A stretch of 64,000 nucleotides of DNA from Octopus bimaculoides. Lineage: Eukaryota. Below, in pieces: positions 6,401-44,089 of this stretch. The stretch is taken from contig NC_069003.1 in assembly GCF_001194135.2 (NCBI RefSeq), positions 25,565,456 to 25,629,455 on the forward strand, in the 5' to 3' direction. The position numbers and the translations under genes were made by a program. Within the stretch, counting starts at the first letter, position 1. Each line of letters starts with the position of its first letter. The notes beneath the pieces are model-generated. The model did not search any database. It was not told the DNA's origin and saw only the letters and a list, made by a program, of their open reading frames with translations.

Positions 6401-8192
6401 AAGGAGACAGAAGAGGTTTCTTGTTGCAGAGGAGCTAAATGGCCACTCATGTTTAGAAGAGAGGATTTATTCAGGAATATATGCTTGTGTAATGAGTGAA
6501 GCATCCAGATGACACTGTAAAGTGACTGGCATTTGGAAGGGTATACAGCTACAAAAACCATGCCAAAATAGGACTCACTGGTGCTGGTGCCATGTAAAAA
6601 GCACTCAGTCCACTCTGTAAGGTGGTTGACATTAGGAAGGGCATCCAACTGTAAAAATCTTGCCAAAACAGACAGTGAAGCCTGGTGCAGTCTTTTGGTT
6701 TGCCAGCTCCTGTTAAACTGTCCAACCCATCCCAGCATGGAAAACTGATGTTGAATGACACTGATGCTGATGATGTGCATAGACATACACACACACTTGT
6801 ATGGAAAGAACAGATAATAATTAAATTACATCTATATCAATAATCTCTCCACAAAATCATCACCACTACCATCTGCATTTTGGGTCAGATCAATATTATT
6901 TTGAGTGGATATTCTTTGAGAAAGCTAAACCCACCACTGGACACTATTTTCAATCGTAAAAAATCATTTTATACTGGTGAATGAAGTTGCTGAGCTTAAC
7001 CACATAGAAGAGACATATGGTGAATGTAGAATGGTCAGTGCTGAGTGGACAAAATGTCATATGCTGTGAAATACTCCCCACACCTGTATGGAAATAGATG
7101 AGATGATAAAGCACATTCCTAGCTTTCTACAATCAAGCTACAACTAGAAATATTGAAAAGAAAATTCTCTAAAGTATACCAAAAACTCACCATTTTTGGT
7201 AATAAAATGTCTTGGAATCATTGTTATTGAAGTTAGTGTCCTCATCAGTTCCACCTAGCATGGCCCAGTTAGAGGGGATGGATTTGTACACCACCTGAAA
7301 CAACAGAACCATTTATGTTTACATGGAATTCCTTCAAGACAGTAACACTTTGACAACTGTATCTCTCTCTCTTTACACACACATATATATATAGCAAATT
7401 GAAAATAAAAACACAAACAACAAAAGTCAAAATGCTGTACACAGTGAATGTATTAGTTTGATGTTTGACACTCAGTTTAAGATGGGAAAAAAGAGGGGGG
7501 GGGGTGACGTTTTGAGCATGGTTCTTCATTAGAAAGAAGGAGGAAAGGTCCGGAGAAAAGAAGATGAATAGTCCAAGAAAAACGCAATACATACAGCAGT
7601 ACTAATAACTGCAGGCATGGATATGTGGTTAAGAATTTCACTTCACAGCTACATGGCTTCAGGTTCAATTCCACTACGTAGTACCTTAGATAAGTGTCTT
7701 CTATCAAAGCTTCACATTGAGAAAAGACTTCTGAGTGAAATCTGGGAAACAGAAACTCTAAGAAAGTCCACTGGAGGGACCATTCTCGTTTTTGTGTCAT
7801 AGACATAATTTGTTGCCCTGCTTAATGCCATCACCTGGTCATTGGGTGTCTTTAGTAGAGGAGGGTCTGTTGCCAACATTCAATCCAGGGTCCAGTCTGA
7901 GGCAAATTCTACAACTACACAACTATTCATGTACAGACAACATCATCATCATCGTTTAACGTCCGCTTTCCATGCTAGCATGGGTTGGACGATTTGACTG
8001 AGGACTGGTGAAACCAGGTGGTTACACCAGGCTCCAATCTGATTTGGCAGAGTTTCTACAGCTGGATGCCCTTCCTAACGCCAACCACTCCGAGAGTGTA
8101 GTGGGTACTTTTACGTGCCACCAGCACGAAGGCCAGTCAGGCGGTACTGGCAACGGCCATGCTCAAAATGGTGTATTTTATGTGCCAGATGA

Positions 8193-8236
<44 letters not shown>

Positions 8237-11200
8237 TACAGCTACATATATGTATGCATGGATATATTTGTAGTTGTACATATTCTGCTAATATATAAAT
8301 AGTAAAATAAATTAAAGAGACATATAAAAAGTACAATTTATTTTTTAATTAAAAACTAAATTAAAAGCAAATTTCCAAACTCACATTAACTTTACTGATT
8401 GTATATTCAAGGCAAGAGTCTTCACAGTCGTCAACCAAAAATAGTTCAAAAGGATCTGCCGTTTCTCCCAAGATTGTGTCGGATCCTCGACTAAATACAT
8501 TTCAAATAAAAAAAGGAAAGAAACAATTAATTACTTTGTTAATTAGCGATATTTTATAGAGAGAGCAGAAGAGAAATCTCTAAATTTAGTTACAAACAGG
8601 TATTTTATTTTAATGCAGTAGTAGTGGTGGTGGTGTCTGGATTTAAATTCTATGTTTTCATTTTTTTTAGTGAATGGAATCTCACATGAAGTTTCTATCT
8701 TCACCAGTATCCAGTAGATCATCCAACCAGGCTTTAATTCTCTAAGAAACAACCCGAGAGAGAGAGGGAAAGAGAGACAGACAGACAGAAACATACCTTG
8801 ACTGCCACACTTTACAACATACATTTAACCACTTTCATGCATTGCACAGTTTTCAACTAGACAAAGATATAGTGTTAACAGAACTATATGCAAAAATTGC
8901 ATCAAGACAGAGGCATGGTGTTAACAGAGTTATGAAAGTAGAGATTGCAGCAAGACAGATGTATGACATTAATAGAGCTATGACTAAAGATTGCACTGTT
9001 CAACCAAGGACTATTTGATCGAGAGTCACCCAGAACTGCCCTGCAGCAACTTTGGATTTGGTTCCTTAGAGAAGCACAAATCTGGTTTCTAAGGTTGTTA
9101 TAAAAAGCATAAATGCTCCCCACTTAACATCCACTAATATGTACACACACATACATACAAACACACAAATACATCACCACCACCACCACCACCACACTTT
9201 TAGTTATCTGAGCAAGGCTAAAAGCTAGTGGCATGGTAGAAACGAGTAAGCCATAGACTAAATACCAATCTAATAAATATTAGACTAAATAAATATTTAG
9301 TTTAGTTTTATCCAAATACTGTATTTTTGGTCATACAAGTCGAATTTTTCACACCAAAATTTACTGCCAAAAATGTAGGTCAACTTAAACACCAAAACGA
9401 CTTTGGAGTACCAAAAATTCCAAGAGAAATGCAGCAGAATTGGAAAGATAGTGATGATGTTTGAATATTAACACTATATACAATGTTGACTTGCATGCTG
9501 GATGTTGTGATTTTAAGTAATTATGTAGATTATAGAAAGGCTTTCTGATGTATTTTATAGTTCTCAGATACACCTGTGTGATTACCTAAAATAGCCTTAG
9601 AATTTTAACCCATTTCATCTGACTTAGTGCATTTAAATCATAATAAAGAGTTATTAGAATATTAAATGGAAAGTAAAAATGAGTGAATTCAATATTATCC
9701 AGGCAAATATATTGATTCATTTGTTTAAATATGTAGACTCTTTTTTTGTTTGAGTATGTGGACTTGTGCTGGATATTAATAGTGTATATTCGTATCTTAC
9801 TGAATAAGTATAAATTAAGGTGTGTATATTGTTTTCAAGTACTGGTCAAATTGTAAGCAAGCAAAAGCCTAAGTTCACTGCTTTCTTTTTCGAACTGTCG
9901 GTATACTTTACTGGAATAAATGGTATGTCCAGAGTTCAAATTTGGTCAAAGTTTATATTGCCTTGTTTTTCTAGGACTCATGCAATAAGTATCCCTAATT
10001 TGCTATTCACCCCTTTGTCATCGTGTCTCTATAAATAATTTTTAAAAGATGTTATTATTACCAGAACCATAATGCATGGAACTTCTTCTCTTTGAACTTG
10101 TCTTCCCACATGTAGGCCACCTTCGCTATATACATCGGCACAGTTGGGTTGGCAGGTTTCACAGCCACACAGTCTCCGACACACACCTGTTAGTAACAAA
10201 CAACATGATGGAGAGGAAATATTCGTTTTAAAAGGAATCTTTGAACTCTAACAAGGAAAGAAAATTAAAACAGAGAGAAAAAAAAACATGAAGAAATTCA
10301 TTTATTGTTGGTTCCATTAATTTTTAGGAAGAATTGTGGGAAATAGAGAAAAATATACAAAATAATGGAGTTTAGGTGTAGGTAAGAGATAGGCATAGAA
10401 GTGTGTGTGGTGATGTGTATGTATGGGTTAAGAGAGTGTGTGTGTGTGTGCATGGTGTGGAGTGTGTGTATGTATGGTGAAGAGTGTGTGTGTGTGTGTG
10501 TGTATGTTGAGGAGTGTGTGTGTGTATGGTGAAGAGTGTGTGTGTGTGTGTGTATGGTGAGGAGTGTGTGTGTGTGTATGGTGAGGATGTGTGTGTGTGT
10601 ATGGTGAGGATGTGTGTGTGTGTGTGTNNNNNNNNNNNNNNNNNNNNNNNNNNNNNNNNNNNNNNNNNNNNNNNNNNNNNNNNNNNNNNNNNNNNNNNNN
10701 NNNNNNNNNNNNNNNNNNNNNNNNNNNNNNNNNNNNNNNNNNNNNNNNNNNNNNNNNNNNNNNNNNNNNNNNNNNNNNNNNNNNNNNNNNNNNNNNNNNN
10801 NNNNNNNNNNNNNNNNNNNNNNNNNNNNNNNNNNNNNNNNNNNNNNNNNNNNNNNNNNNNNNNNNNNNNNNNNNNNNNNNNNNNNNNNNNNNTGAAGAGT
10901 GTGTGTGTGTGTGTATGGTGAGGATGTGTGTGTATATGTGTTTGGCATGGAGTGTGTGTATGTATGGTGAAGAGTGTGTGTGTATGGTGAGAAGTGTGTG
11001 TGTTTGGCATGGAGTGTGTGTGTGTGTGTGTGTGTGTATGGTGAGGATGTGTGTGTATATGTGTGTTTGGCATGGAGTGTGTGTGTATGGCAAGGAGTGT
11101 GTGTCTGCATGGCGCAGAGCATGTGCATGCACGGTGCGGAGTGCGCGCATGCATGCACATATGGTGTGGAGCATATAAGTGCATGGTGCAGAGCATGTGC

Positions 11201-13783
11201 ATGTATGCTGTGGAGTGTGTGCATGTATGGCGTGTTGTGTGTGTATGCATGATATGGAGTGTGTATGGTGTGGAGAGTGTGTGTGTATGGTGTGGAGTGT
11301 GTGTACATGTGCATATGCATGGTGTGTGTTTGTGTGTTGTGAGTGCTGAGAGATGAACTGTCGTAAACTAAGTCTTCTGAGTGCAAAAAAACAAAAAGAG
11401 AAACCTCTTGCCAACCACTCACCTCTTTACCATTTATGTTCACAGCATTGTAATAAATATTTGTGGGTGTCGTTTTGACAGGTTCTCCAACCCATTCCAG
11501 TTTGGTCTATAAAATAAACACACAAAAAAAAAAAAATAAAACATATATATTCTTTTACATGCCTCAGCCCTCAGGCTGTGGCCATGCCAGGGCACACACA
11601 CACAGAACATATATATNNNNNNNNNNNNNNNNNNNNNNNNNNNNNNNNNNNNNNNNNNNNNNNNNNNNNNNNNNNNNNNNNNNNNNNNNNNNNNNNNNNN
11701 NNNNNNNNNNNNNNNNNNNNNNNNNNNNNNNNNNNNNNNNNNNNNNNNNNNNNNNNNNNNNNNNNNNNNNNNNNNNNNNNNNNNNNNNNNNNNNNNNNNN
11801 NNNNNNNNNNNNNNNNNNNNNNNNNNNNNNNNNNNNNNNNNNNNNNNNNNNNNNNNNNNNNNNNNNNNNNNNNNNNNNNNNNNNNNNNNNNNNNNNNNNN
11901 NNNNNNNNNNNNNNNNNNNNNNNNNNNNNNNNNNNNNNNNNNNNNNNNNNNNNNNNNNNNNNNNNNNNNNNNNNNNNNNNNNNNNNNNNNNNNNNNNNNN
12001 NNNNNNNNNNNNNNNNNNNNNNNNNNNNNNNNNNNNNNNNNNNNNNNNNNNNGAGAGAAAGCAAGATGTGAGACGAGAGAGAGTGAAATACTGAGATGTA
12101 AGAGAGAGAGTGTGAGTGAGTAAAGTAAGAAAGCAATGAAGATGATATAGAAACTTACCTTGGTGTTTCTACTTGCCACATGACGGATTGGTTTTTCTGA
12201 GTCATCTCCTTTCTGGAAGGGAAGAAAAGAGAATATCTCGGTACTTGCTCCACATGCTTGAATGAATATATATATATATATATATATATATAACTATATG
12301 AGACTAGTTATATATCTATTAGAATGTCAATTAAAGCACATTCCCCATTTGAGCTACCTGATGTCATCCACAGTTACAATATAATTTTCACTGGATCTAC
12401 ATCAGCAAATCCGCAGTGTTTGTCGACAGAACTACATAAAAAAATGTTTATTCCCCAGAGAAACAAAGGTCCACCCATCAACATACAACAACCACTGATG
12501 TGCTGCATCCTCTTGTCACCTCAACTGTCCCCCACATTGGATTCTGCTCTCAGAGCTGCAATGTTTTTTTGGGTTTTTTTCTCCAACCACTGAAGATAAA
12601 TATGAACTCAAGAGACAGAGAGAAAAGAAAAACTATTAAAAGGTTTTAAAAGGTTCCCCACTTTCCCAGCCAAAACACATTAGCAAGGGCTGACATAACA
12701 GTCACATCAACTTCTTCAACACTGAAGTCAAAGGATGAACGGCAGGGGGGATCCTGTGGATATTCATTGGACTCCTTTTAGTGTGATCCCTTGGAAGAAA
12801 TCTGAATTTCATCCAAAAAATTGTACTTTTATTGATCAAAACACAAGTCATTAAAAATATTAGATTGTGTCAGTGTTAGGGTTATAAAGGATCCCAGCCT
12901 GCCACACATTCTAATTCCATTCCCTTACTGTCCTAGTTGAACAACTCTAGTGTTGGGGCCACAATAACAACATCAGGATAAGGTTAACTTTGGAGCAGGA
13001 GGTGGGGAGGAAAAGAAGGCATCTAAGACACTATCCAGTTTAACACTACTGTAAACTGGGTACTTCTTGGGTACCCTTAATGGAATTTACTGTATTGCAT
13101 AATTTCAGACAGGACCTATGAATCTTTCAGACCATGGTTTCTGCAGGCATTTGCTAAATAGACATTTGGGGCTGGGTCTCAGTCACACTGATTTCATAAA
13201 TATGACCCTTCTTCTCTGATTAATTTACAAATACAAAACATAACAAATACCTTTACAATATTTTCATCATCATCACTTTGGATTTCATCTTCATCAGCTT
13301 CAGCAACAGCAATGTTAGGACATCTTGTTAAAGATAAAGATTAAATAAATAAAATTTCTGTATCAGAAACTGAAAGCTTTGAGAAGGGAAATAGAAGTAA
13401 TAATCTTTTCTACTGGAATCACAAGGCCTCAAATTTGGGAGAAGAGATTAAGTCAATTACATCAACCCCGGTGTGTAAGTGGTACTTATTAACTGATCCT
13501 GAAAGGATGAAAGGCAAAGTCAACTTCACTAGAATTTGAACAGAGAACATAGCAGCAGATGAAATACCGCTAAGCATTTTGCCTGGTGTGTTAACGGTTC
13601 TGACAGCTTGCTGCCTTAATAATAATGATAACAATAATCTTTTCTACTGTAGGCACAAGGCCTGAAATGTTGGGGGGGGGGGNNNNNNNNNNCAGATTTT
13701 GAATTCAGAACATAAAGACAGATGAAATGCCACTAAGCATTTTGCCCAGCATACTAATGATTCTGCCAGTTTGCAAACAACAA

Positions 13784-16800: not shown

Positions 16801-19800
16801 TACGTAGAGCCCTCCTGTAAAAGAAATAATGAAAACACATCTCAGCACCATGCTCTGTGCAAACTTGATTGTGAGAATCTCTCCAGCACACATGCACTCT
16901 CTAAAGCTAAGCTGAACAAGTTGATAGATTACAGAACTAAACAAGAGTTTAACAGTTAAAATACCACCATCTCTTTTTGGTTGTATCAGTAAAGAAACAT
17001 TTAGATCTCAAAAGATCAACCCAACTTAAATAGATATCAGAAAGGGGTAATAAGTTCACTGTAGCACTTTATCAGGATCTTTTCTGTTTGCCTGACACTT
17101 TTCAATTCCTTTAATTTTGTTCCATTTGATTTCAAATTTGGTGTATTGATGTAGTTTTGTATGCTAATTATGGAAATGAAATTCACTTTTGCAATTAATT
17201 AATAAATAAAAAGTTAATAGCTTTTAAAATTTGCAAATTTTGGGTAATTTTAGCCAATTGAAAGCCACACACATACTGGTGCCTGTTTCCATAGTAACAA
17301 GACAAGGTATAGATTAACTGTCTTTCAACCTTCTAGATGAAAAAAAAAATCTGATTTAGACACAAGGACAGCAATTTTGAAGGGGGAGGTTTAGTTGATA
17401 CCATCAACTTTAATACATGACTAGAACCTTATGTTATTGACTCTGAAGAAATGAAAGGTAAAGTTGGCCTCAGTGGGAAATGAATCCAGAACATAAAGAG
17501 CCAGAATAAATACCATAAAGCATTTTTTTTTCCAAATGAGCTAATAATTTTGCCAGCTCCATCATTTTCCAGAGAATAGTAATAATTTTGGCACAAGGCC
17601 TGCAATTTCATGGGAGGTGGTAAGCCAATTACATCGACCCCAGCGTTTAACTGATACTTATTTTATCAACCCCAAAAAGACAAGTCAACTTTGGTGGAAT
17701 TTAAACTCAGAACGTAAAAACGAATGTAATATTGCTAAGCATTTTCTCCAGCGTGCAAACGGTTCTGCCAGCTCACTGCCTGAATAATAACTAATAATAT
17801 AAAGCAAAAATTATTCCCATGGTAACTGGTGCCTTTAACACCACAACACCCAAATTGCCATCTAAGAAACTGAAAGGTATTGGAATTGAGACTTGCATAG
17901 TTGATTTACAGAATAATACCATCTTGTATTCTAAGAAAGATTCTTGAGATTTGAGGAAACTTGGCACCAAACTTCAAAAGAACATCCTTACTAATACAGC
18001 ATGTAGTAGCTTAATAATAAAGAATTATCATAATGGTTGCAGCATGGAAGGTGTTTATAAGCCATTTAAAATAACACAAAAACCGTCAGATTCACTTCAA
18101 CATTTAAATTTAATTTGTCAAAATATTGTCGTTGCTTTGAGACCGCGACCTGTTCACTGACAAAATTCCATGTATACATGCATGTGTGTTATATGCAGCT
18201 TTGTCAGTGAACAGGTCACGGTCCCAAAGCGACGAAAATATTTTGGAAAATTAAATTTAAATGTTGAAGTGAATCTAACGGTTTTTGTGTGTTATTTTAA
18301 ATGGCTTATAAACACCTTCCACGCTGCAATTGTTTTTGTTCCAGCACACGATCTCAGATCAGGTCACTTGCTATGCAAGTACATCTCCGCAATTATCATA
18401 ATGGTTTTATACTAAAACATATACCAAACTAGTTTTAAGAAAAAAACTTTCACAATAGTTATAAACATTGACCCCTCAAAGAATATCGTGAACCTTTCTT
18501 GTAAAGAAACTAAAAACTAAAAATGAAGAACAAAGTACCGTTTGCCAAGAGTGACTCCTGAAAGTTTGATCAACGCCCTCATACAAGGTGTTGTGATGAG
18601 GAGAGCTTCGTCATCATCAGCAGCTTCATCATAACTTTGAACCTAAACATAGAAAGATAGGAATGTATAACAAGAGGTGGTGGTGGTGGTGGTATGATAT
18701 TAATGATGGTGATGGTAGTAGTAGTGGTGATGATGACGATGATAGTGATAGTGATATTGGGGATTGCAATATTGCACCTTTGACATTTTTGCATCAATCT
18801 CACCCCACCAAAAAAATGTTAATAATTGTTAATGTAATAACAATGATGGCTGTAATGATGATATGGCTTAGATTAGTTATTTTTTGTAGATAAAATAAAG
18901 ATAAGGATGAAGGATAAAGTCATATAGACTCCTAGGGCCAGCTTACGGTTTCTGGCACCCATGCCAACGTCGTCTCCTTCATTGGACATGAAACTCGGCT
19001 TGCGAAGACCTGTTGGGGCAAGCGAAAGCGAAATCATCATGGCACCTGTGCCCAGCGTCGCCTTCCTGGCACTTGTGCTGGATGGCATGTGTAAAGACAT
19101 TTGAGCGAGATCGTTGCCAGTGCCGCCGAACTGGCTCCTGTGCAGGTGGCACATAAAAGCACCCACTACACTCTCGGAGTGGTTGGCATTAGGAAGGGCA
19201 TCCAGCTGTAGAAACTCTGCCAAATCAGATTGGAGCCTGGTGTAACCATCTGGCTTCCCCAGTCCTCAGTCAAATCATCCAACCCATGCTCGCATAGAAA
19301 GTGGACGTTAAACGACGATGATGATGTGGCGCATATATTCTCCCCACTGGATAGGATGCTGGTCCATCAAGAGCAAAACACATCGCCTGGTCCAGGAATG
19401 GAAACCACAATCTTACAATCATGTGTCCAATACCTTAACCACTAAGCCACGTACCTCCACTTTTTTGGTAATATTGAGAATAAAAGGTGGTGTTCTTTTA
19501 AGCGGTTTTACCTGGATGAAGGTGAGGAAGATGACTTACCTGATCAACGACAAACTGGGCATGGCGCAACAAAGCATCTTCAGTAGGGATATTGGTGATG
19601 CCATTTGGTGGAACTGTTATCTGAGCAAATGATAAAACAGATTTTCATGAGATATTTTTACATGTGATAAAATATATTTCTATGCAATAAACTATATTTT
19701 CTGAACAAAAGAAAAAAAGATTCATTTTTGGCAATTATAATTGCTTAAGACTGAAATATAAGCATTTTTGTATATGAACTCTCCCCGCCTCCGCTGCCAC

Positions 19801-21924
19801 CCAAAATATTGGTGTTAATGGAGACTGTTGATTCTAATAATAATAATAAGAGCCCTCAGAGAGTGCAAACCTCTGCCAAAGCAACACCAACGTCCTCTCA
19901 ACAATTAGTCAGAGTTGATTTTTAAAATGAGAATATCTGAAATAAAACTTGACTGCTCTCACAAACAAGAATACTAAAAATGAACCTGACTGTTCACAAA
20001 AATTTTTTAATCTGGAAAAATAATCCAGAATCCTTGTCCGGTACCTGATTGATCCCAATGGTAGCCATGGAATGTGAAGTGGCTGTAGAAAATTTAGTAA
20101 CATTAATAAATAGTTGATCCTTATCTAATACAAGCCAAAGTTAAATTCACTCTTCAAAATAGTTAAGCCTAAAGGGAGATAATTGAGAGAGAGACTTGAA
20201 AGTTAACATAAGATCGTAATCATGTGAAGTAAATATAACAAACTATCCAGAATTCTTGTCAGGTACCGGATCAATCCCAAAATCTAATCAGTTCGTGCCA
20301 GTCATGAGGTCAACATTCCTGAAAGTTTCATCCAAATCCATCCAGCGGTCCTTGAGATATCTTGTCCACAAACAAACAAACACAACTGAAAACATTTTTA
20401 CCTCTGCCTTCCCTAAGGCAGAGGTAATAGTAATCCTTTCTACTATAGGCACAAGACCTGAAATTCTGGTGGGGAAGGGGCTAGAAGATTACATCGATCT
20501 CAATATTCAACTGGTACTTATTTTATTGACTCTGAAAAGATGAAACGCAAAATTGACTTTGATGGAATTTGAATGCTGAACATAAAGACAAATTGCCATT
20601 AAGCATTTTGCCTGAGTGCTAACAATTCTGCCAGTTTGCCGCCTTAACAATAATAATAATAAAATGACAAAAGAAACCAATTCTGCCAAGCAAAGGAACT
20701 GACCTGAATTTTATTGAGCAAATCTTCATAAGTGGCATCAAGGTTACTCTGTAAGAATTCAATGGCAATTTTGGAAAGATAGATCTTCTCCCTCATGATG
20801 TCCATAAATGGGGAATAAATTTTACTGGGAGACATTAAAATATAATCAGCATAAGCTAGAAGGTAGAAAGGAAAAAGAGAACAGTTAGGAGTCACCATGA
20901 AATGAATGAGATTTCATGACAAAAAGAGGACGTTGTTACAAAACTATATTAGTGCTGTCTTCGAATATTCTCATAGCATAGCAGCAGCAAATTGAAAATC
21001 AGAAACAATCCACAGATCCAACATTCCAAACACATTGCAGTTCTTTTCAAGGATCTCTTTGCATATTTCTTATGTTGTCTTTTCCTATTACATTAAAACA
21101 AGGTCTTAAATAGCATCAATCATTATGATTTTAAACCTGTTTCTTCCATCATACTTTAACTTCTACTCTTTCAGTCATTGGAGCTCTCTTTTGCCTTGCA
21201 ATCTACAAGGCAACCCCATTAGTGCTAGAAAAGGCAACACCCAGTCCACACTAAATCAGTGCTTCTCAACCAGGGTTCCACGAGAAAGAGTGAGATAAGC
21301 TAATGCTAATTTCATGATCGTAATAATACTATATATGCACAACATATTATTGGTTATTGTAATATAGACATCATCCTATCTAACCTATTATGTTATCAAA
21401 AAATATAACAACTATATATATCATCATCATCATCGTAGAAGGTTTAGAGATGATGTACAAGTATGATATATTAGAGAAAATAATAAGGTACTCAAAGATC
21501 TGGATGGTTGTACATTTACAGATTTTTATTAATATGTCACATGTTTTTATAAATCATATATTAGCGCTTTTATCTACTCTAATAGATTCTTCAAAATCTA
21601 AAGAATTTCTTAGAGTACATGCAAGCGATAATATATGATTTATAAAAACATGTGACATATTAATAAAAATCTGTAAATGTACAACCATCCAGATCTCTGA
21701 GTACCTTATTTTTTCTAATATATATGGATATATAAAAATTTAGTGAATGGAGTAAAACGCATAGGTTAACTGAATACTTTTATTTCCAACATATGTTTCG
21801 AAGATTACAAATTATACCTTCCATAGGAATAGGTGATGTTGATAAGAATGTAATCTTCTCTTCAGGGAAATGCATGGGAACCAGCTTAACCGTAAGACAT
21901 TTTAACCGAATATCAGAACTGTAG

Positions 21925-21978
<54 letters not shown>

Positions 21979-24877
21979 ATATATATATTTACATGAACTA
22001 TAATGAATATGAGAACTGTAGTTATATATATATATATATTTATTTACATGAACTATGATGAAAAAATATGAAAAAGATATGGTATACAATATTTTTTGTG
22101 CAGAGGTTCCTTGAGACATGCAATTTATTTTAAGGGTTACACAAGGGTAAACAAGTTGAGAAACACAGCTCTAAATGATTGGTAAACTGAGAAAATCTGA
22201 TGCTTTACCAATTAAGTCAGCTTAACAACAACAGCCATAACAGCATCATTAGCAACAACAGCAACACACACAGAATGAAAAGTAAAAGTTCCACCTGAGA
22301 AACTGCAAATATTACCTGTTGTGAAACCAATTAAAGAATTTTCTCCACCATCAAACCCTGCAGTCCACCATTCATTGATCGGTCCCATTGTTTTACAAGG
22401 GACACCACCTGAAATCAACAAAGACAAAACAACATTGCTTTAACAATGACATCATAGTTTGAGCTAAATAGTTTCTAGTGCTGGCTTCTGGTTACTACAG
22501 CAATGCATTGACATTAATGTGGGGGAAGGGAAGAGGAAGAAACCTTGACTCCAAGATTCCTACAGCAGTAGGAGGTATCAAAATATTAAGTTAGATATAG
22601 ACATGGCTACTGGGCTAAGAAGTTAATCGAGGTGAACATTTACTTTATAGAAAAATAAAACAAGGTTCTTTTTTTATAGTACATTAGCGAATTAATATAT
22701 GGTTTTACAGGTGTAAACCACCTTAACTTCTCTCTGCTGACCAGTGAAGTGTAAATCATCATCATCTTCATCTTACAAGCACAGGCATGGTGGCTACGTG
22801 GTAAGAAGGTTGCTTCCCAACCACATGGTTCCCGGTTCAGTCCCACTGCATGGCACCTTGAGCAAGTGTCTTCTACTTTAGCCTCAGGCATTGTACACAC
22901 ACACGTGTGTATGTGTCCTTGTGTCTGTGTTTGTCCCCCTCCATGGCTTGAACTCTAGTGTTGAGTTGTTTATATCACAGTAACTTAGTGGTTTGACAAA
23001 AAGGACTAATAGACTAAGTAGTGTTGTTGTTGGCACTCCGTCGCTTACGACATCGAGGGTTCCAGTTGATCCGATCAACAAAACAGCCTGCTCATGAAAT
23101 TAACATGCAAGTGGCTGAGCACTCCACAGACACGTGTACCCATAACGTAGTTCTCGGGGATATTCAGCGCGACAGTGTGACAAGGCTGACCCTTTGAATT
23201 ACAGGCACAACAGAAACAGGAAGAAAGAGTGAGAGAAAGTTGAGGTGGAAGAGTACAGCAGGGTTCACCACCATCCCCTGCCAGAGCCTCGTGGAGCTTT
23301 AGGTGTTTTCGCTCAATAAACACTCACAATGCCCGGTCTGGGAATCGAAACCGCGATCCTATGACCGCGAGTCCACTGCGCCATTGCACCTCCACAGACT
23401 AAGTAGTAAACTTTAAAGAAAATAAGTACAAGAGTCCCTTAGTTCAACTAAAATTCCCCAAGGTAATGCCCCAGCATGGCTGCAATCTAATGACTGGAAC
23501 AAGTAAAAGGTCAAAAGTTTCATCAACAGAAGATGAAATTTCTTTGTCAGTCAAACAGAAACAAGTTAGTAAGTGAACAACTGCAAAATCTACCTGGACA
23601 TTGTCATTTTAACCCTTGGTCAATGTTGATTGAGAATATCTATGACCATCTTGTCTGTTTAAGATTACACAGAAACAGGGTTCTTCCTTCATTCTCTTTT
23701 TTTTTTTTAAGATGGTAGGGAGAACTGGCAGCTATATCTAGTAGATCAAGCAAACACATAGAGAGTCTCCCATTAGCTCTTTGCAAGCAGCTGCCAGACT
23801 GGAAGTCATATGACCAGTAGAAACAGACCGTATCCTGACTAACATATTTCTAAATAAAATTCTGTTTCCATGGAAACAAAAATAGGAGAGAAATAAATTA
23901 AAAAAAAAACAGAAAAGGAACCAGAAAATACAACCATACCATCAGCACTTGGGTTTTCATCATAAATTGGCTTGACAACTCCACTGAAGTAGAGCTCAAC
24001 ATTCTTTTCTATCAAACCAGTGTCAAATGCACACAAATGGGTGGCTTTATCATAAATACTGAAAACAAAACAAATCATTGAGGCTTAAAGTTTAAATGTC
24101 AGACAAAAATTGTAAATGAGATTATAGAGTTTCAATCTATCAACCACTTCTTTAATACAGGATGGGCCAAAAGTCACACACAAAATACATTTAATATGCT
24201 CCAGAATTGACAAAGACATGCTTCAATTTTTTCTAAAATTAAATAAATAAAATGTATACACACACACACATACACAAAGCGAAATTGGGATGGCACCTGT
24301 GCCCAGCGTCGCCTTTCTGGCACTTGTGCCCGTGGCATGTGTAAGGACTTTCAAGCAAGATCGGTGCCAGTGCCCCTGGACTGGCTCTTATGCAGGTGGC
24401 ACATAACATACACCTTTTTGAGCATGGTCGTTGCCAGTACTGTGTGACTGGCCCTTGTGCCGGTGGCACGTAAAAGCACCCACTACACTCTCGGAGTGGT
24501 TGGCGTTAGGAAGGGCATCCAGCTGTAGAAACTCTGCCAAATCAGATTGCAGCTTGGTGTAGCCATCTGGTTCACCAGTCCCCAGTCAAATCGTCCAACC
24601 CATGCTAGCATGGAAAGCGGACGTTAAACAATGATGATGATGATATACAATATTTACAATAGAAACTTTTTATTACTATAATAATACATATACAAACACA
24701 CACACATAGGTGAGTATATCCACAAGGGAAGCAACAGAAAAAAAACCCTAATTGGCCTTGGAATAAGAGGGCTGATCTGTAGGCACTTGCCACTGGAATG
24801 TGTGTTTGATGGGATCCCTGATGTGTGTGTGTGTGTGTGTGTGTGTGTGTTCTCATATGTATTTACCTGTAGGTAAC

Positions 24878-24910
<33 letters not shown>

Positions 24911-27900
24911 GGCTTATGTACATGTGTCAGTTTCTACCTGTATTTGTCTCTTTCATGTGTNNNNNNNNNNNNNNNNNNNNNNNNNNNNNNNNNNNNNNNN
25001 NNNNNNNNNNNNNNNNNNNNNNNNNNNNNNNNNNNNNNNNNNNNNNNNNNNNNNNNNNNNNNNNNNNNNNNNNNNNNNNNNNNNNNNNNNNNNNNNNNNN
25101 NNNNNNNNNNNNNNNNNNNNNNNNNNNACATACAACGGGCTTCTTTCAGTTTCCGTCTACCAAATACACTCACAAGGCTTTGGTCAGCCTGAGGCTATAG
25201 TAGAAGACACCTACCCAAGGTGCCACGCAGTGGGACTGAATCCGGAACCATGTGGTTGGTAGGCAGGCTACTTACCACACAGCCACTCCTGCGCCTTGTT
25301 CGCTATTAGCTGTGAATGTGCATATGTGCTTGTGCTTGATACTATGTATATATCTTAATGTGTCTATGTGTTGTGTTTGTAAGTTTCCTCGTGTATTCTT
25401 CTGTTTGTGTACATACACATCTGTTCTACTGTCTCTCCTTCATGGATGAAAGGGAATTGTATATCAAGACTATTTTATCTAATGTGTCCATCCTCTCATT
25501 TACATAGGTAGTAATTTGAGGGAATTTGGCTGCTATTTCTAACTGGTCGAGTGACCATGTAGTAGCTCCTTCATAAACAAATCATCATCATCATCATCGT
25601 TTAACGTCCGCTTTCCATGCTAGCATGGGTTGGACGATTTGACTGGGGACTGGTGAACCAGATGGCTACACCAGGCTCCAATCTGATTTGGCAGAGTTTC
25701 TACAGCTGGATGCCCTTCCTAACACCAACCACTCTGAGAGTGTAGTGGGTGCTTTTACATACCACCGACACGAGGGCTAGTAAGGCGATACTGGCAATGG
25801 CCACGCTCAAAATGGTGTATTTTATGTGCCACCCGCACAAGAGCCAGTCCAGGGGCACTGGCAACGATCTCGCTCGAAAGTCCTTACACATGCTGCGGGC
25901 ACAAGTGCCAGAAAGGCTACGCTGGGCACAGGTGCCAAAAAATATAAATAAATGAATAAAGAAGCAAAAAGAAAAAAAGCGAAATACAAACCTAAAATTG
26001 GAGAGTTTGTGTTGGGGTCGTTCATCGAAACTAGACACTTCATCATCATTGCCAGAAAAGACAGACAATTTGGGGTCAGTGAGAGCTATGAATTCCTCAA
26101 CCTTAAATATAAGAGGACAAACTGAAATATAGGGGATCAAGATATGGCAGCAAAATTAGACAAAGGATATGGTTCAAGGGTCCACAATCAAATACAGGGT
26201 GTCCCAGAATTAACTATTTCAATGAAATTGGGTAAATTTTAAAAAAAACTAACAGAATTTTATGTTCATTACTTGATTATGATACTAAAATAAATAGCTT
26301 TATAAATCTTACATCAAGACTTTATTGAAAATTTTCAATATGTGCTCCATCTGTACCCTTGCAAATTTCAAATCTGTCCTTAGCCATTGTGCAACACATT
26401 TTAAAGCATTTCAGGAGTTAAGGACTGCACTGCTAACAAAGCATTGGGTTCAGCTAAAGTCAGCTAAACTATTGCTCCACCCTGGAGATGGAGGCAGAGA
26501 AAATGATTGCAGCCAAATAGCAAAAAGCTACTGTGGACAAATAAGTGGAATCCAACAGAAATGATAATAAAATTATAAAAATTATAAAACATACACTTTT
26601 AACACATATTAAACATGATAAACATAAATAAAAGTTGGTTTAAAAAAAAAATTAGTCCAATTTCACTGAAATGGCTAGTTAATTCTGAGACGCCCTATAC
26701 TACGACAAGTGTTTACAGAACACGCACNNNNNNNNNNGGGTATCGCAACATAATAGCACGACTGAGATATGAGGATTATTATTGCTTAATGGTTGTAGGG
26801 GGGCCAACCAATTTTGGGATGAAAGAAATAAAAAAGATAGAAAAGACAAGAGATAAAAACAAAAGAACAGGGAAAACAGAAAGAAAATATAAAAAAAAGA
26901 CAAAGAAAGAAGAAAGAAGAAAAGAGAGAATGAGTCAGAAGGAAATTCAAGAGGAAAGGGAGCATTATAAAATGCTTACTTACGGCATCAGGAGGGTCAC
27001 CATGAAATAACACCAATTCAGGGTCATCTAACAACTGTTTACAGTCCCTGCATTTAATAGGGGTCACCTGTTCTTTGGCTAGTTTGGTATCTGTGTTTCT
27101 TTGAAAGATGGAAAAGATGGAGAAAAAAGATAAGCCTTGTAAACAACAGGCTATCAATTATAATTAACAGTGCTCCCACCAGCTTCCCCAGTTTTGGAAT
27201 GGGTTTTTAGGGGTTATGTAGCTTTCATAGTAAATTTTCATTGATATCTTCCTGGTTATCAGAAATCAGTGACCTTCCAAGGTGCATTTCAACTTTTGGG
27301 AACTAAAAATTCTGCAGTTATCAACAGTAGGGGAATTATTTTGAAGGATACAAATCTAATTAAATTTTATGTAAAGCAATAAATTTGTGTTTTAAAAAGT
27401 TCCGCTCATTTTTGGTCAGACCTAGTATGTTATCTACACTATCATATTCCTACTATTGTGTCTACACTGAAGGTAAGGTTTCCTTCTCAAGCCATACCAA
27501 CTCATAAGGGCCAGTTTCCCGGTTTCCATGGTGTACATATTTCCCACATGGACAGGACACCAGTCCATTGCAGGATAACTCATTTTTGCCAGCTGAGTGG
27601 ACTGGAGCAATGTGGAATGAAATGTTTTGCTGAAGAACACAATGTGTTGCTCGATCCAGAATCGAAACCACAATCTTAAAATCATGAGTCCAACACCCTA
27701 ACTACTAAGCCATGTGCCTCTACCTATCTACACTAACAATAACTGCATATCTGAGCCCTCATTCTCGAGACATCTAAACTCTATTATATCAGCATACAAT
27801 TTCTCTAACAACCAAACACAACCAGAGATAGGATTAACAACAAAAAAACCTCCTTACTGCACTGATGAAGCTTCCTTATTTTCATCATCTTTGTCATTAA

Positions 27901-30900: not shown

Positions 30901-33900
30901 GTCAATAAAATAAGTACCAGCTGAACACTGGGGTCGACATAATCAACTCATCTCCTCTCCCTCAAACTTGCTGGCATTGTGCCAATATTTGAAACCAACA
31001 TGATCATATGTTTCTACTCAATAATCTTTGGTCACTGATTTACTCAATCAAGCCTGACCTGGGAATTGAACTACAGCAATAAGCAAAAAGGTGACCAAGT
31101 GAAAACCTGACATTAATGTAGTTGAATTCTCTCCTGAATTAAAACAAGAAATATTTTGCTGCAAGTCACATAATTAAATATATAAAGAACCAATAGATCA
31201 ACTTACGAGGATTTTTATCATTTCCTGTTGGTTCAGACGATGGAACTGCTTCTGGAAATTTTACACCATCTTCTGTGGAATGACCATTCTGAAAGACAAA
31301 ACCAAAAGTTGTATTGCTTATGACTATATCTACATATCTTCTGCATTTGTTTACATAATCAGTCTGTTTTGGCTTGGTTTCTATGGCTGGATACCCTTCC
31401 TAACACCAACCCCTCCAGTGTACTGGGTGTCTTTTACATGTCACTGACATGGGTGCCTTTTACGTGCCACTCACATGGGTTCCTTGTACACGTCACCAGC
31501 CCGGTTTCCCTGTATGCGTCACTGGTATGGGTGCCCTGTACACGTCACTGGCATGGGTGCACTGTACGTGTCACTGGAACAGATGCCTTGTACACATCAC
31601 TAGCAGAGGTGCCTTGTATGCATCACCAGCACTGACCACAACCACGACTTCACTTAGCTTCTAGCGTCTTATCAAGCACAACAAATCCCCAGAAGTCTCA
31701 ACCACTTGTCATTTTCATTACCAAATCCATTCACAAGGCTTTAGTCAGTGCAGGGCTTTAGTAGAAGACACTTGCCCAAGGAACCATGCAGGAGGACTGA
31801 ACCTGAAACGATGTGGTCGAGAAGTTTATTTCTCAACTACACAACCAGACCTGCACTTATATGTATAAAAAACATTCACACAGAAGTACAACACACACAA
31901 TTACTTACTGTAAAATTCAAACCATTTTCTACACCATTCTCATTTCTTCCATTTGAGCTCTGACCATTTCGTCTGGTTGTAGGTGGAGAAGATTGGACGT
32001 TGTTAGTAATAGCATCAGTGGCTACAGAGGTAGATTCTTTCTTCTCACAGTTATGTTCCTTCTCATCCATTTTACCCATCTTGGACGGTGACAGTCCAGG
32101 CTCCACTTCTTCATCATTTTCAGCGCTATCATTAATGCCATTTTTATTTTCTACTGAACGTTTGGACGCTGGCGTTGTGTCATCTTTGGTAACTACCTCA
32201 GGCTTAACAAGAACTGGCTTCAGCGATGGTACCTTGGGTAGCGTGTTAGACACCAGGGGTTGTAGAATGTCTTCCATCTTTTTGCAGAAACCTTTCTGGA
32301 GAGAGAGAGAGAAAATATAAGAAGAGGGGAAAGAGAACTGAGAAAAAAAAATTGGAAATTTGACCAAACAGAATATNNNNNNNNNNAGAGAAAATATAAG
32401 AAGAGGGGAAAGAGAACTGAGAAAAAAAAATTGGAAATTTGACCAAACAGAATATTGAACAGTTTCACACAAATCATCTCTGCTTGATTTTACTGTGGTA
32501 GCCAGTGGCTCATCTATTGTCACACTAGTATGTTTTATAATCAGCCTCTCCTCCCAGTTATGAGCAGACCCAATTAACCTACCTACATGCTACCCTAACA
32601 CAATTACTGCAAGAATTCCAATGAACTTTTCCTCTTCATATATCTAACCCCCCCCCCAAAAAAAAAGAGAGGGAAATCAACAGGCGGGTTAGTAAGATGA
32701 CCCAAACTTAAAAAAGAGAATTTTTTTTTAAATGTTTATATTTTTATATATATTTTCACATTCATTATAACATCCATTAATTACCCATTCAATAGATCAC
32801 TCGTAAAAGGTTGAAGACCACATATATGTTTTTGTCTGTCCTTGTTTGTCCCCTCTATGTATCCTGTTATTAGGAATAAAAAGAAAATCTTCATATATCT
32901 ACCCCCTACCACCATCACACACTCTCATCAGCATCTGCTCTCCATGCTGGCATGGGTTGGATAGTTTAGATGACTGCACCAGGCTTCAGTGTGTTTTGGC
33001 ATGGCTTTTACAGCTGTATGCCCTTCTTAACACCAAGCTCCCTACAGACTGGACTATAACACTCACTGATCATAAAACTATTGATCATAAATCATAAACC
33101 ACTGATCAATATCACTGAAAGAATTTATTGTTTTATTTTTTTAGGTTTTTTTTACACCACTGCCATTCCATTGATGTGTGAAACACAATGGGGCTACCAT
33201 GTTGCATCTGTCACCATACTGAGGCCCTGAACAACATACATAATTCAGCCTGCTCCAGTTTACTTGACTGAGTAAAATAAAAGCACAAAACAGACATCAC
33301 TCAATCTTACATGCTTGAGAGACTTTAGAAGAAGCAACCATCCGGAAAAATTAGTCCAACAATAACTGCAGCTGACCCATCCATGCATGAAAAAATTGCT
33401 GTAAAACAGGTTTTAAAAAAAAAAAAAGAATAAAGAAACCCCAGAAACATATCTACATATACTGGAACTTAAATTTTATAAGTATTTTAGTAATTGAGAG
33501 ATCTCTGCTCCTGGATAGGATGCTAGTCTATCAAACACTTTGCTTATGGGAGAAAGGAATAAACACAGCACTGCAGCCTAAACCCTTGTTCCTGCAAATA
33601 CTATTTACATTGGTTGATGACCTGTATTCAACTATACTACTGAATCACAAATAGGTAGACTTGGTCAAATAATAATAAGCATTTTTTCTTTATTCACCAC
33701 TGAGGGTTTATATAAAAGATTGGAGACAGCACAGGACAAAACAACACAAAAAGAACGGGATTTAACTGTATAAAATGATAATAACAATAATAAATAAATC
33801 CCCAAAAGAGCTTTTTGCTCAATGACTTGCACAAATGATTTGTTAATAGTATTCAAATGTATGTGCTACACAATAGCTCACTCTCTACATCAAATCGATG

Positions 33901-43920: not shown

Positions 43921-44089
43921 TATTAAAATTGAGGAAGACCGGTTTATGGGATTAACTTAGGTTTCCCGCCCACAAAGGGTTTAGCTATGACGTATCGTCA
44001 GATCCCAAAAACCTGTTGGTCCATAACCTCTTAAAAATGGACGGGAAACCTAAGGTAATCCCATAAACCGGCCTTCCCCAATTTTAATA
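43921..44089. mobile_element. Short MITE-like hairpin with 48-bp terminal inverted repeats in TA context, ~1.1 kb upstream of the DNMT1 ATG
   Basis: 43921-43968 vs 44042-44089 inverted, 3 mismatches; flanked by TA dinucleotides. Confidence 0.8.

What the first reader, a model, noticed from the sequence alone, without database searches (positions are those of the whole stretch)
21764..21891. Intact hammerhead ribozyme motif on the sense strand of a DNMT1 intron
Seen: the minus strand (the DNMT1 pre-mRNA) contains every element of a type I hammerhead. These are CUGAAGA (21865-21859), a perfect 10-bp stem II GAAGAUUACA/UGUAAUCUUC closed by the canonical G-C, GAAA, a 2-bp stem III around a palindromic AUAU loop, a GUU cleavage triplet (cut between 21788 and 21787) and stem I AUUUCC/GGAAAU. 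Stem I extends further through AUGC/GUAU (past an AAAA bulge) and GGUUAAGCUG/CAGUUAACC. Established: minimal type I hammerheads with a short palindromic stem III occur in Penelope-like retroelements and metazoan satellite/retrozyme repeats and often need dimerisation to cleave; intronic self-cleaving ribozymes are known in vertebrate genes (CPEB3, RECK). Inference: this motif could cleave the DNMT1 pre-mRNA co-transcriptionally and affect splicing or output, or be a retroelement relic.
Basis: partly seen in the sequence, partly recalled or inferred. Interest (0 to 1): 0.88.

Follow-up and report, generated by a model that had tools for sequence, protein, structure and literature searches.

The report
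Solitary hammerhead ribozyme motif in DNMT1 intron
A complete, well-folded copy of the small self-cutting "hammerhead" RNA sits in the sense strand of an intron of the DNA-methyltransferase gene DNMT1; it is real rather than chance, but it looks like a single stray copy left by a mobile element, as is common in invertebrate genomes, not a proven regulator of the gene.

Summary
These are CUGAAGA, a perfect 10-bp helix II closed by G10.1-C11.1, GAAA, a 2-bp helix III with an AUAU loop, U17, and a 6-bp helix I.

Rfam Hammerhead_1 aligns end to end at 26.9 bits (E 4e-5 in a 106-nt scan). That is below the 34-bit gathering score because helix II carries 55 nt where the model expects 10. No comparable motif appeared in 400 simulated windows, so chance is excluded.

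The gene is DNMT1 on the minus strand (Pfam RFD, CXXC, 2x BAH). The motif lies 425-552 nt into a 1,460-nt GT..AG intron.

There is only one copy in 64 kb, with no tandem partner and no adjacent RT/endonuclease ORF. The same intron in two distant invertebrate DNMT1 loci is 211 and 628 nt long and has no hammerhead.

The best reading is a young, solitary copy of a type I hammerhead borne by a retroelement (Penelope-like or retrozyme lineage). I expect it to cleave weakly at best as a monomer. A regulatory role is unsupported but not excluded, because no Octopus genome could be reached to test copy number or conservation. This is a new member of a known kind.

The parts
21764..21891 (-). Whole self-paired hammerhead domain (128 nt), including the distal 'closing' part of helix I
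   Evidence: Sequence. The MFE fold reproduces the three-way junction. It is the only strong hit of a single-sequence CM in the window, at 161 bits.
21782..21871 (-). Type I hammerhead proper (90 nt), as aligned to Rfam RF00163 Hammerhead_1
   Evidence: 26.9 bits, E 4e-5, model positions 1-45/45, with a 55-nt insert in helix II.
21866..21871 (-). Helix I, 5' strand AUUUCC
   Evidence: Pairing probability about 0.8.
21859..21865 (-). Catalytic core box C3-A9, CUGAAGA
21849..21858 (-). Helix II, 5' arm GAAGAUUACA (G10.1 at 21858)
   Evidence: Pairing probability 0.95-1.0.
21810..21848 (-). Unusually large loop 2 (39 nt) with its own small hairpin
   Evidence: This is the cause of the Rfam insertion penalty.
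21800..21809 (-). Helix II, 3' arm UGUAAUCUUC (C11.1 at 21800)
21796..21799 (-). Core G12 A13 A14 A15.1 (GAAA). C11.1pG12 is the only CpG in the domain.
21789..21796 (-). Helix III with its loop. ACAUAUGU is an 8-nt palindrome: a 2-bp stem plus an AUAU loop, or an 8-bp intermolecular helix in a double hammerhead.
   Evidence: Monomer pairing probability about 0.3. The dimer is favoured in cofold.
21788..21788 (-). U17. The predicted cleavage is 3' of this base, between 21788 and 21787.
   Evidence: Aligned to C17 of the Rfam consensus.
21782..21787 (-). Helix I, 3' strand GGAAAU
20856..22315 (-). Host intron of DNMT1 (1,460 nt, GT..AG, phase 1) within the RFD-coding region
   Evidence: Splice sites read from the sequence. 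The flanking exons match DNMT1-RFD. The same intron position occurs in L001 and L008.
22316..22408 (-). Upstream DNMT1 exon (..[30 protein letters not shown])
20704..20855 (-). Downstream DNMT1 exon ([14 protein letters not shown]...DLLNKIQ)

Best explanation
This is a solitary, structurally intact copy of a metazoan type I hammerhead ribozyme. It belongs to the kind carried by Penelope-like elements and their non-autonomous derivatives (non-LTR retrozymes). It landed in sense orientation in a DNMT1 intron.

In its parent element such a motif works in multimeric or tandem transcripts. Two copies swap helix I strands and join their palindromic helix III (here ACAUAUGU) into one long helix. G12 and G8 then catalyse attack of the 2'-OH of residue 17 on the adjacent phosphate. 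The products carry a 2',3'-cyclic phosphate and a 5'-OH.

In the DNMT1 pre-mRNA there is only one copy, so only the monomer fold is available. Helices I and II should form. Helix III is marginal, residue 17 is U, and the canonical loop1-loop2 contact is probably lost because helix II is 10 bp with a 39-nt loop. I therefore expect slow or no cleavage in vivo and little or no effect on DNMT1 output.

Shown: the motif, its statistical significance, its predicted fold, the gene and intron context, and its absence from two distant orthologous introns. Inferred: retroelement origin, youth of the copy, and weak activity.
For: Motif integrity:
- All core and helix requirements are met.
- RF00163 gives a full-length alignment at 26.9 bits, E 4e-5. 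It also matches the conserved distal A-U/U-A positions of helix I.
- Descriptor simulations gave 0/400 windows at this quality.

Fold:
- Helix I has probability about 0.8, helix II about 1.0 and helix III about 0.3, even with +-300 nt of context.
- The hammerhead fold is only 1.3 kcal/mol above the MFE.

Dimer:
- Cofold gives -45.4 kcal/mol against 2 x -16.8 for monomers, with the double-hammerhead topology.

Architecture matches known invertebrate retroelement hammerheads:
- 6-bp helix I and 1-2-bp helix III with a 2-4-nt palindromic loop (PMC4209133).
- Longer helix II (7-8 bp) in Penelope-like-element motifs.
- The mussel retrozyme hammerhead reads ...CUGAUGAGUCUUUUGUAGACGAAACGCGCGUC, with the same GAAAC-NNNN-GUH design.

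Such motifs are abundant:
- Giant squid has 235 Hammerhead_1 hits.
- In Xenopus about 43% of retrozyme copies overlap introns, and monomers are spread evenly.

Context:
- The orthologous intron is 211 nt in L001 and 628 nt in L008, with no hammerhead. The octopus intron was therefore enlarged by insertions.
- The motif lies between a (TA)n tract and TA-rich sequence. (TA)n is a reported target of Penelope-like elements.
- U17pG1.1 is a TpG in a locus with CpG o/e 0.35. This is compatible with decay of the canonical C17pG.
Against: - No second copy, tandem repeat, pseudo-LTR or adjacent RT/GIY-YIG ORF exists in the 64-kb window. Retroelement membership therefore rests on resemblance alone.
- The source genome could not be searched for copies.
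- All 18 helix pairs and 13 core positions are intact, and the essential C11.1pG12 CpG survives in a CpG-depleted locus. That fits recent insertion, but it would also fit purifying selection.
- The Rfam score is below the gathering threshold.
- Mussel hammerheads with the same 2-bp helix III do cleave co-transcriptionally in vitro at about 0.1 per min. The 'weak activity' inference could therefore be too pessimistic.
Confidence: 0.7

Rival explanations
1. This is an exapted intronic ribozyme. The hammerhead is retained by selection in DNMT1 and cleaves the nascent pre-mRNA, modulating splicing or transcript yield. It would be analogous to the conserved RECK/C10orf118 hammerheads or the CPEB3 HDV-like ribozyme.
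For: - It lies on the sense strand within an intron.
- There are no disruptive changes in 49 constrained positions, and the essential CpG is retained despite CpG o/e of 0.35.
- The hammerhead fold dominates locally.
- Precedents for retroelement-derived intronic hammerheads exist (PMC6155905, PMC3088659).
Against: - There is no hammerhead in the orthologous intron of two distant invertebrates.
- Helix III is weak and needs a partner copy that is absent.
- Residue 17 is U, and the 10-bp helix II with a 39-nt loop is atypical.
- When the whole 5' part of the intron is included, the probability of helix I falls to 0.05.
- Sense orientation is a 50% prior.
- Intronic retrozyme monomers are commonplace.
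Confidence: 0.07
2. This is a chance look-alike. An AT-rich intron happens to contain the short core boxes with complementary flanks.
For: - The Rfam score is below gathering (26.9 against 34), and no hit appears in the standard whole-window scan.
- The overall folding z-score is only -1.33.
- The helix I extension is not significant.
- A second descriptor hit at 6767(+) shows that loose descriptors do fire by chance.
Against: - 0/400 simulated windows reached helix I >=6 and helix II >=6.
- My extrapolation to I >=6, II >=10 with G-C closure is about 1e-6 per window, or about 0.03 per 2.7-Gb genome.
- The CM E-value is 4e-5 over all 4,227 families. The CM scores only 2 of the 10 helix II pairs.
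- The 6767 hit gets no hammerhead match under identical conditions.
- Real hammerheads occur in hundreds of copies in cephalopod genomes.
Confidence: 0.02
3. This is part of a still-active small non-autonomous element: a retrozyme-like unit of about 190 nt, bounded by TA repeats at about 21735-21925. It would be transcribed and processed on its own, and DNMT1 would be an incidental host.
For: - The domain is highly self-paired, like retrozyme RNAs of 170-400 nt.
- The hammerhead is intact.
- TA-rich boundaries lie on both sides.
- The palindromic helix III has been kept.
Against: - There is no tandem repeat and no second unit.
- No internal promoter or tRNA-like head was found.
- The boundaries are only guessed.
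- A single unit cannot yield a unit-length RNA, which needs two cleavages.
Confidence: 0.15

Closest known systems
Canonical metazoan type I hammerheads of non-LTR retrozymes / satellite repeats (Rfam RF00163; mussel, coral, newt, Schistosoma)
   Same: - Type I topology.
- CUGANGA / GAAAY / RUH boxes.
- 6-bp helix I followed by an internal loop and a closing stem.
- 2-bp helix III capped by a palindromic tetraloop that can form a double hammerhead.
- Conserved A-U/U-A pairs at the distal end of helix I.
   Different: - Single copy rather than 170-400-bp tandem repeats.
- Helix II of 10 bp with a 39-nt loop instead of about 4 bp with a small loop, so the canonical loop1-loop2 contact is unlikely.
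- U17 instead of C17.
- An AU-only palindrome (duplex -7.0 against -13.3 kcal/mol for the mussel-type GCGC version).
- Below the Rfam gathering score.
Minimal hammerheads in the pseudo-LTRs of Penelope-like elements (Cervera & de la Pena 2014)
   Same: - Long helix II (7-8 bp there).
- Very short or palindromic helix III, implying dimeric action.
- Most genomic copies occur as single dispersed motifs from truncated elements.
- Elements tend to insert in microsatellites such as (TA)n.
   Different: - No RT/GIY-YIG ORF or pseudo-LTR adjoins it. An exon lies 425 nt upstream.
[quoted passage not shown]
- Helix I is full length (6 bp) rather than 4-5 bp.
Conserved intronic hammerheads of amniotes (RECK HH9, C10orf118/CTCL HH10) and the CPEB3 HDV-like ribozyme
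   Same: It is a self-cleaving-ribozyme motif on the sense strand of an intron of a protein-coding gene, and it is thought to derive from retroelement hammerheads.
   Different: - Those are defined by deep conservation in orthologous introns and by shown in vitro activity.
- Here conservation is absent in the two distant orthologues available and untested in close relatives.
- Activity is untested.

Membership tests
Hammerhead ribozyme, type I (Rfam RF00163) | Invariant core: C3 U4 G5 A6 N7 G8 A9 ... G12 A13 A14 ... U16.1 H17 | tested here: met
   CUGAAGA 21865-21859; GAA 21799-21797; U16.1 21789; U17 21788.
Hammerhead ribozyme, type I (Rfam RF00163) | Three helices around the core with helix I open and helices II and III capped; G10.1-C11.1 and A15.1-U16.1 closing pairs | tested here: met
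   Helix I 6 bp, helix II 10 bp (G-C closed), helix III 2 bp plus a 4-nt loop.
Hammerhead ribozyme, type I (Rfam RF00163) | Covariance-model score at or above the curated gathering threshold (34 bits) | tested here: not met
   26.9 bits, E 4e-5, full-length alignment. The shortfall is due to a 55-nt insert where the model has 10. No hit in the whole-window scan.
Hammerhead ribozyme, type I (Rfam RF00163) | Loop 1 - loop 2 tertiary contact that gives fast cleavage at physiological Mg2+ | tested here: inconclusive
   The helix I internal loop lies 6 bp from the core, as is canonical. Loop 2 lies 10 bp from the core rather than 4, so the contact geometry is probably lost. No 3D test was possible.
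Hammerhead ribozyme, type I (Rfam RF00163) | Site-specific self-cleavage giving 2',3'-cyclic phosphate and 5'-OH ends | not testable with these tools
   This needs an in vitro transcription assay and end mapping.
Penelope-like element pseudo-LTR hammerhead | Location in a direct repeat flanking an RT + GIY-YIG ORF (or a demonstrably truncated copy of such an element) | tested here: not met
   No RT/EN coding sequence is adjacent, and a DNMT1 exon lies 425 nt upstream. No repeat of the flanks occurs in the window. Truncated-copy status cannot be tested without the genome.
Penelope-like element pseudo-LTR hammerhead | Many dispersed related copies in the same genome | not testable with these tools
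   No Octopus genome is reachable. There is no second copy in 64 kb.
Non-LTR retrozyme | Tandem repeats of about 170-400 bp, each with one type I hammerhead | tested here: not met
   Single copy with no tandem unit. Monomer relics do exist in other species.
Non-LTR retrozyme | Type I hammerhead with a 1-2-bp helix III capped by a palindromic loop | tested here: met
   The ACAUAUGU palindrome, compared with the mussel construct.
Domesticated intronic hammerheads (HH9/HH10 type) | Sense strand of an intron of a conserved protein-coding gene | tested here: met
   DNMT1 on the minus strand (Pfam RFD 2.5e-42, CXXC, BAH x2). Intron 22315-20856.
Domesticated intronic hammerheads (HH9/HH10 type) | Conservation of the motif in the orthologous intron across species | tested here: not met
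   The orthologous intron in L001 (211 nt) and L008 (628 nt) has no hammerhead core. These are distant taxa, and close relatives were not testable.

The most novel reading that the evidence does not exclude
A retroelement-derived hammerhead has been retained in octopod DNMT1 and self-cleaves the nascent transcript. The output of the maintenance DNA methyltransferase, itself a silencer of retroelements, would then be tuned by a ribozyme that came from one. This would be the first conserved intronic hammerhead with a plausible regulatory logic outside amniotes.
Probability: 0.04. Interest if true: 0.75.

Novelty: new member of a known kind. Interest (0 to 1): 0.3.

Why it matters
Type I hammerheads are known in thousands of copies in invertebrate genomes and in a few conserved vertebrate introns. 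One more copy is not surprising in itself.

This copy has three points of interest:
- It is fully intact.
- It lies on the transcribed strand of a key epigenetic gene.
- It has an unusual 10-bp helix II with a large loop, which standard Rfam scans miss.

It is a cheap test case for whether solitary intronic hammerheads cleave host pre-mRNAs in vivo. It also shows that gathering-threshold scans under-count hammerheads that carry inserts. If it proved conserved among octopods, it would extend ribozyme domestication beyond amniotes.

Tried and rejected
1. Rfam at gathering threshold on the whole window, and an E-value scan of 901 nt, gave no hammerhead. Only the 106-nt scan with laxer filters showed it.
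2. I looked for orthologous Octopus loci. The first protein search found nothing. The second found DNMT1 relatives at no more than 65-70% full-length identity, or 85-86% for single exons, and none was from a cephalopod congener. Exact-ORF look-ups of two window ORFs next to the intron are not on record.
3. Two metagenome pattern scans for family members gave 0 hits.
4. I looked for in-window copies with blastn, nhmmer and a single-sequence CM with filters off. None was found. The weak CM hits at 57420-57534 and 43941-44069 score on both strands and are generic hairpins.
5. A second descriptor hit at 6767(+) was rejected. It has a U10.1-G11.1 closure and a low-complexity context, and it gets no Rfam hammerhead match.
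6. The idea of a tRNA-derived SINE head next to the motif failed, because ARAGORN found nothing.
7. The idea that the GIY-YIG-like ORF at 45.4 kb marks a Penelope-like element with a comparable hammerhead failed. Pfam gave no hit, there are no RT remnants upstream, and there is no hammerhead core nearby.
8. The helix I extension was tested as a significant feature and is not significant (p about 0.14).
9. Paper supplements were searched for cephalopod hammerhead sequences. None is held.
Full report
**Observation**

- Helix I is AUUUCC (21871-21866) paired with GGAAAU (21787-21782).
- The core box is CUGAAGA (21865-21859).
- Helix II is GAAGAUUACA (21858-21849) paired with UGUAAUCUUC (21809-21800). 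It has ten uninterrupted Watson-Crick pairs closed by G10.1-C11.1, around a 39-nt loop.
- GAAA is at 21799-21796.
- Helix III consists of A15.1-U16.1 and C15.2-G16.2 around an AUAU loop.
- U17 is at 21788, so the scissile bond lies between 21788 and 21787.
- ACAUAUGU (21796-21789) is an 8-nt palindrome.
- The distal pairings of helix I (AUGC/GUAU past an AAAA bulge, then CUGG/UCAG and GGUUAA/UUAACC) appear in the minimum-free-energy fold.

**Is it more than chance?**

Rfam gave nothing at gathering thresholds over the whole window, and nothing in a 901-nt E-value scan. When only 106 nt were given, so that the filters were lax, RF00163 Hammerhead_1 aligned over its whole length (model 1-45/45). 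The score was 26.9 bits and E was 4e-5 for all 4,227 families.

The shortfall against the 34-bit gathering score comes from 55 nt in helix II where the model expects 10. The model scores only two of the ten helix II pairs. The alignment also matches the conserved A-U/U-A pairs at the distal end of helix I.

I wrote a descriptor requiring CUGANGA, helix II, GAAA, helix III, UH and helix I, and ran it on 400 first-order Markov windows of the same composition:
- The relaxed form gave 0.0475 hits per window.
- With helix I >=5 and helix II >=4 it gave 0.0075 hits per window.
- With helix I >=6 and helix II >=6 it gave none.

I extrapolated with a per-pair probability of about 0.385 (my arithmetic from base composition). 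That gives roughly 1e-6 per window for the observed quality, or about 0.03 per 2.7-Gb genome.

The only other descriptor hit, at 6767(+), has a U-G pair at 10.1/11.1. It sits in CUGAUG low-complexity sequence. It gets no hammerhead match under identical Rfam conditions, which serves as a negative control.

Two weaker points remain. The overall folding z-score is unremarkable at -1.33. The energy gained by the helix I extension (-8.7 kcal/mol) is matched by 14-15% of shuffled or random genomic flanks. I therefore treat the extension as present but not significant.

**Gene context**

Minus-strand reading frames carry recognisable DNMT1 exons. A spliced concatenation scores as follows in Pfam:
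- DNMT1-RFD 2.5e-42.
- zf-CXXC 2.9e-13.
- Two downstream pieces score BAH at 8e-13 and 1e-10.

Its best database relatives are DNMT1 proteins.

The motif lies in a 1,460-nt intron (22315-20856) with GT..AG ends, a polypyrimidine tract and phase 1. The intron sits between the exon ..[23 protein letters not shown] (22408-22316) and the exon [14 protein letters not shown].. (20855-20704). The hammerhead domain occupies intron nucleotides 425-552 on the transcribed strand. 'Sense strand of a DNMT1 intron' is therefore correct. I could not verify the species.

**Surroundings**

On the transcript, the 5' side of the motif carries a (TA)n/(CA)n microsatellite with a local tandem duplication (about 22055-21908). 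Thirty nucleotides 3' of the motif lies a roughly 280-bp near-perfect inverted repeat (about 21735-21455, arms about 90% identical). This repeat is MITE-like and produces sub-threshold plant and animal miRNA-model hits.

No tRNA-like head is present. blastn, nhmmer and a single-sequence covariance model run with filters off find no second copy of the hammerhead domain or its flanks anywhere in the 64 kb. No other CUGANGA...GAAA core with a credible helix II exists in the window.

**Folding**

With up to +-300 nt of context the hammerhead secondary structure is essentially the predicted ground state:
- Helix I has probability about 0.8.
- Helix II has probability about 1.0.
- Helix III has probability about 0.3. 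Its competitor is the AAC/GUU register, which would sequester U17.
- The fold constrained to the catalytic topology is only 1.3 kcal/mol above the MFE.

If the whole 5' part of the intron is included, the probability of helix I drops to 0.05.

Two copies cofold into the classical double hammerhead. Helix I strands are swapped and helix III becomes an intermolecular palindromic helix. The energy is -45.4 kcal/mol, against 2 x -16.8 for monomers. The AU-only palindrome is weak, at -7.0 kcal/mol against -13.3 for the mussel-type ACGCGCGU. No partner copy is available in cis.

**Related sequences**

No cephalopod DNMT1 locus could be reached. The protein collection holds no relative closer than 65-70% overall, or 85-86% for single exons. 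Exact look-ups of window ORFs failed. Two metagenome pattern scans were empty.

Two distant invertebrate DNMT1 loci were recovered through exon-bearing ORFs. These are L001 (an ENA metagenome scaffold) and L008 (JGI 3300027495). Both have an intron at exactly the same position and phase. It is about 211 nt in L001 and about 628 nt in L008, it is unalignable to the window, and it has no hammerhead core.

The intron is therefore ancient, but the hammerhead is not part of its conserved content. The octopus intron has been enlarged by insertions.

**What it most likely is**

The architecture is that of invertebrate retroelement hammerheads:
- Cervera and de la Pena describe canonical metazoan type I motifs with a 6-bp helix I and a 1-2-bp helix III capped by a 2-4-nt palindromic loop. 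These act as dimers in tandem transcripts (PMC4209133).
- Variants from Penelope-like elements have a longer helix II (7-8 bp) and mostly occur as dispersed single motifs from truncated elements.
- The cloned mussel retrozyme hammerhead reads CUGAUGAGUCUUUUGUAGACGAAACGCGCGUC. This is the same GAAAC-NNNN-GUH design (PMC7229834 supplement). It cleaves co-transcriptionally at about 0.1 per min.
- Penelope-like elements favour microsatellite targets such as (TA)n (PMC8557442).
- The giant squid genome has 235 Rfam Hammerhead_1 hits (PMC6962438).
- In Xenopus about 43% of retrozyme copies overlap introns, and monomers are spread evenly along chromosomes (bioRxiv 10.64898/2026.07.22.740005).

A solitary sense-strand intronic copy is therefore an expected by-product of such families.

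The copy looks young or constrained. None of the 36 paired and 13 core positions is disrupted. The essential C11.1pG12 CpG survives in a locus with CpG o/e of 0.35. The one departure from the usual consensus is U17 instead of C17. It forms a TpG with G1.1, which is the product expected from deamination of a methylated C17pG. This is an inference, and U17 is still an allowed H17.

**Mechanism and expected consequence**

Some of this is inferred, and the rest comes from established hammerhead chemistry (PMC6155905). If the catalytic fold forms, G12 acts as general base and G8 as general acid. They promote attack of the 2'-OH of U17 on the 21788/21787 phosphate. This splits the intron into a 5' piece ending in a 2',3'-cyclic phosphate and a 3' piece starting with a 5'-OH.

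For this copy I expect slow cleavage, for four reasons:
- Helix III is marginal as a monomer.
- There is no partner for a double hammerhead.
- A 10-bp helix II puts loop 2 out of reach of the helix I internal loop, which lies 6 bp from the core. The tertiary contact needed at sub-millimolar Mg2+ is probably missing.
- U17 is, from my own knowledge of NUH-triplet kinetics, a poorer substrate than C17.

From my own knowledge of engineered intronic ribozymes (exon tethering; only fast-cleaving variants abort splicing), a slow intronic ribozyme would have little effect on mRNA yield.

**Comparison and membership**

The motif works like a type I hammerhead and meets that family's sequence and topology definition. 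It fails the Rfam gathering score, for an explained reason. It cannot be filed under any of the following:
- A Penelope-like-element pseudo-LTR motif, because no adjoining RT/EN or repeat is present.
- A retrozyme, because there is no tandem unit.
- A domesticated intronic hammerhead, because there is no conservation in the orthologues available.

The first two remain the most plausible origin.

**Verdict**

It is a new member of a known kind, with modest interest (0.3).

The most novel reading that the evidence does not exclude is a conserved, active ribozyme tuning DNMT1 in octopods. I put this at about 4%. Copy number in the genome, presence or absence in sister species, and a simple in vitro cleavage assay would decide it.

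Noticed in passing
window 21455-21735: A roughly 280-bp near-perfect inverted repeat (arms about 90% identical, MITE/foldback-like) lies 30 nt downstream of the hammerhead on the transcript. It produces sub-threshold hits to several miRNA precursor models (MIR2593 44 bits, MIR6288 35 bits).
   Followed up: partly
window 21908-22055: A (TA)n/(CA)n microsatellite is embedded in a local tandem duplication: the unit ATAGTTCATGTAAATA-(TA)n-AACTACAGTTCTSATATTC occurs twice. It lies immediately 5' of the hammerhead domain. (TA)n is a reported insertion target of Penelope-like elements.
   Followed up: partly
window 6767-6835 (+): A second hit of my relaxed hammerhead descriptor: CUGAUGA, a 6-bp helix II with a U-G closing pair, and GAAA. 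It sits in low-complexity sequence inside a repeat copy and gets no Rfam hammerhead match. I judge it a chance hit.
   Followed up: yes
window 45360-45722 (+): An ORF with a C-x2-C...YIGQTGR...F.EH motif recalls the GIY-YIG endonuclease of Penelope-like elements. Pfam gave no hit, there are no RT remnants upstream (an assembly gap lies at 43071-43883), and there is no hammerhead core nearby. The resemblance is unconfirmed.
   Followed up: partly
window 41159-41461 (+): A Tc1/mariner-type transposase fragment (Pfam DDE_3, E 5.7e-5, below the curated cut-off).
   Followed up: partly
window 1089-1460, 1897-2346, 6382-6825, 8002-8295, 18876-19265, 24391-24585, 31324-31632, 53086-53385: At least eight copies, on both strands, of one interspersed repeat family. 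It is recognisable by the pseudo-peptide ..[19 protein letters not shown].., and several copies lie in DNMT1 introns. It is probably an abundant SINE-like element.
   Followed up: no
whole window; intron 20856-22315: CpG is strongly depleted (o/e 0.35 in the window, 0.34 in the intron) with a TpG/CpA excess (1.3). This is consistent with germline methylation of this gene body.
   Followed up: partly
L001 2101-2311; L008 4728-5350; window 20856-22315: The phase-1 intron after the codon for ..GF(T/S)T in the RFD domain is at the same position in three distantly related invertebrate DNMT1 genes. Its length ranges from 211 to 628 to 1,460 nt. In L008 the next two octopus exons are fused into one.
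   Followed up: partly
window 10628-10892, 11617-12052, 24961-25127, 43071-43883, 50852-51075, 55956-56390 and four 10-12-nt runs: Assembly gaps total 2,382 N, and several lie inside DNMT1 introns. Repeat content near them, including possible further element copies, is therefore unseen.
   Followed up: no
window 57420-57534 and 43941-44069: The hammerhead-domain CM gives weak hits on both strands (13-18 bits). These are generic long hairpins or inverted repeats, not hammerheads.
   Followed up: partly
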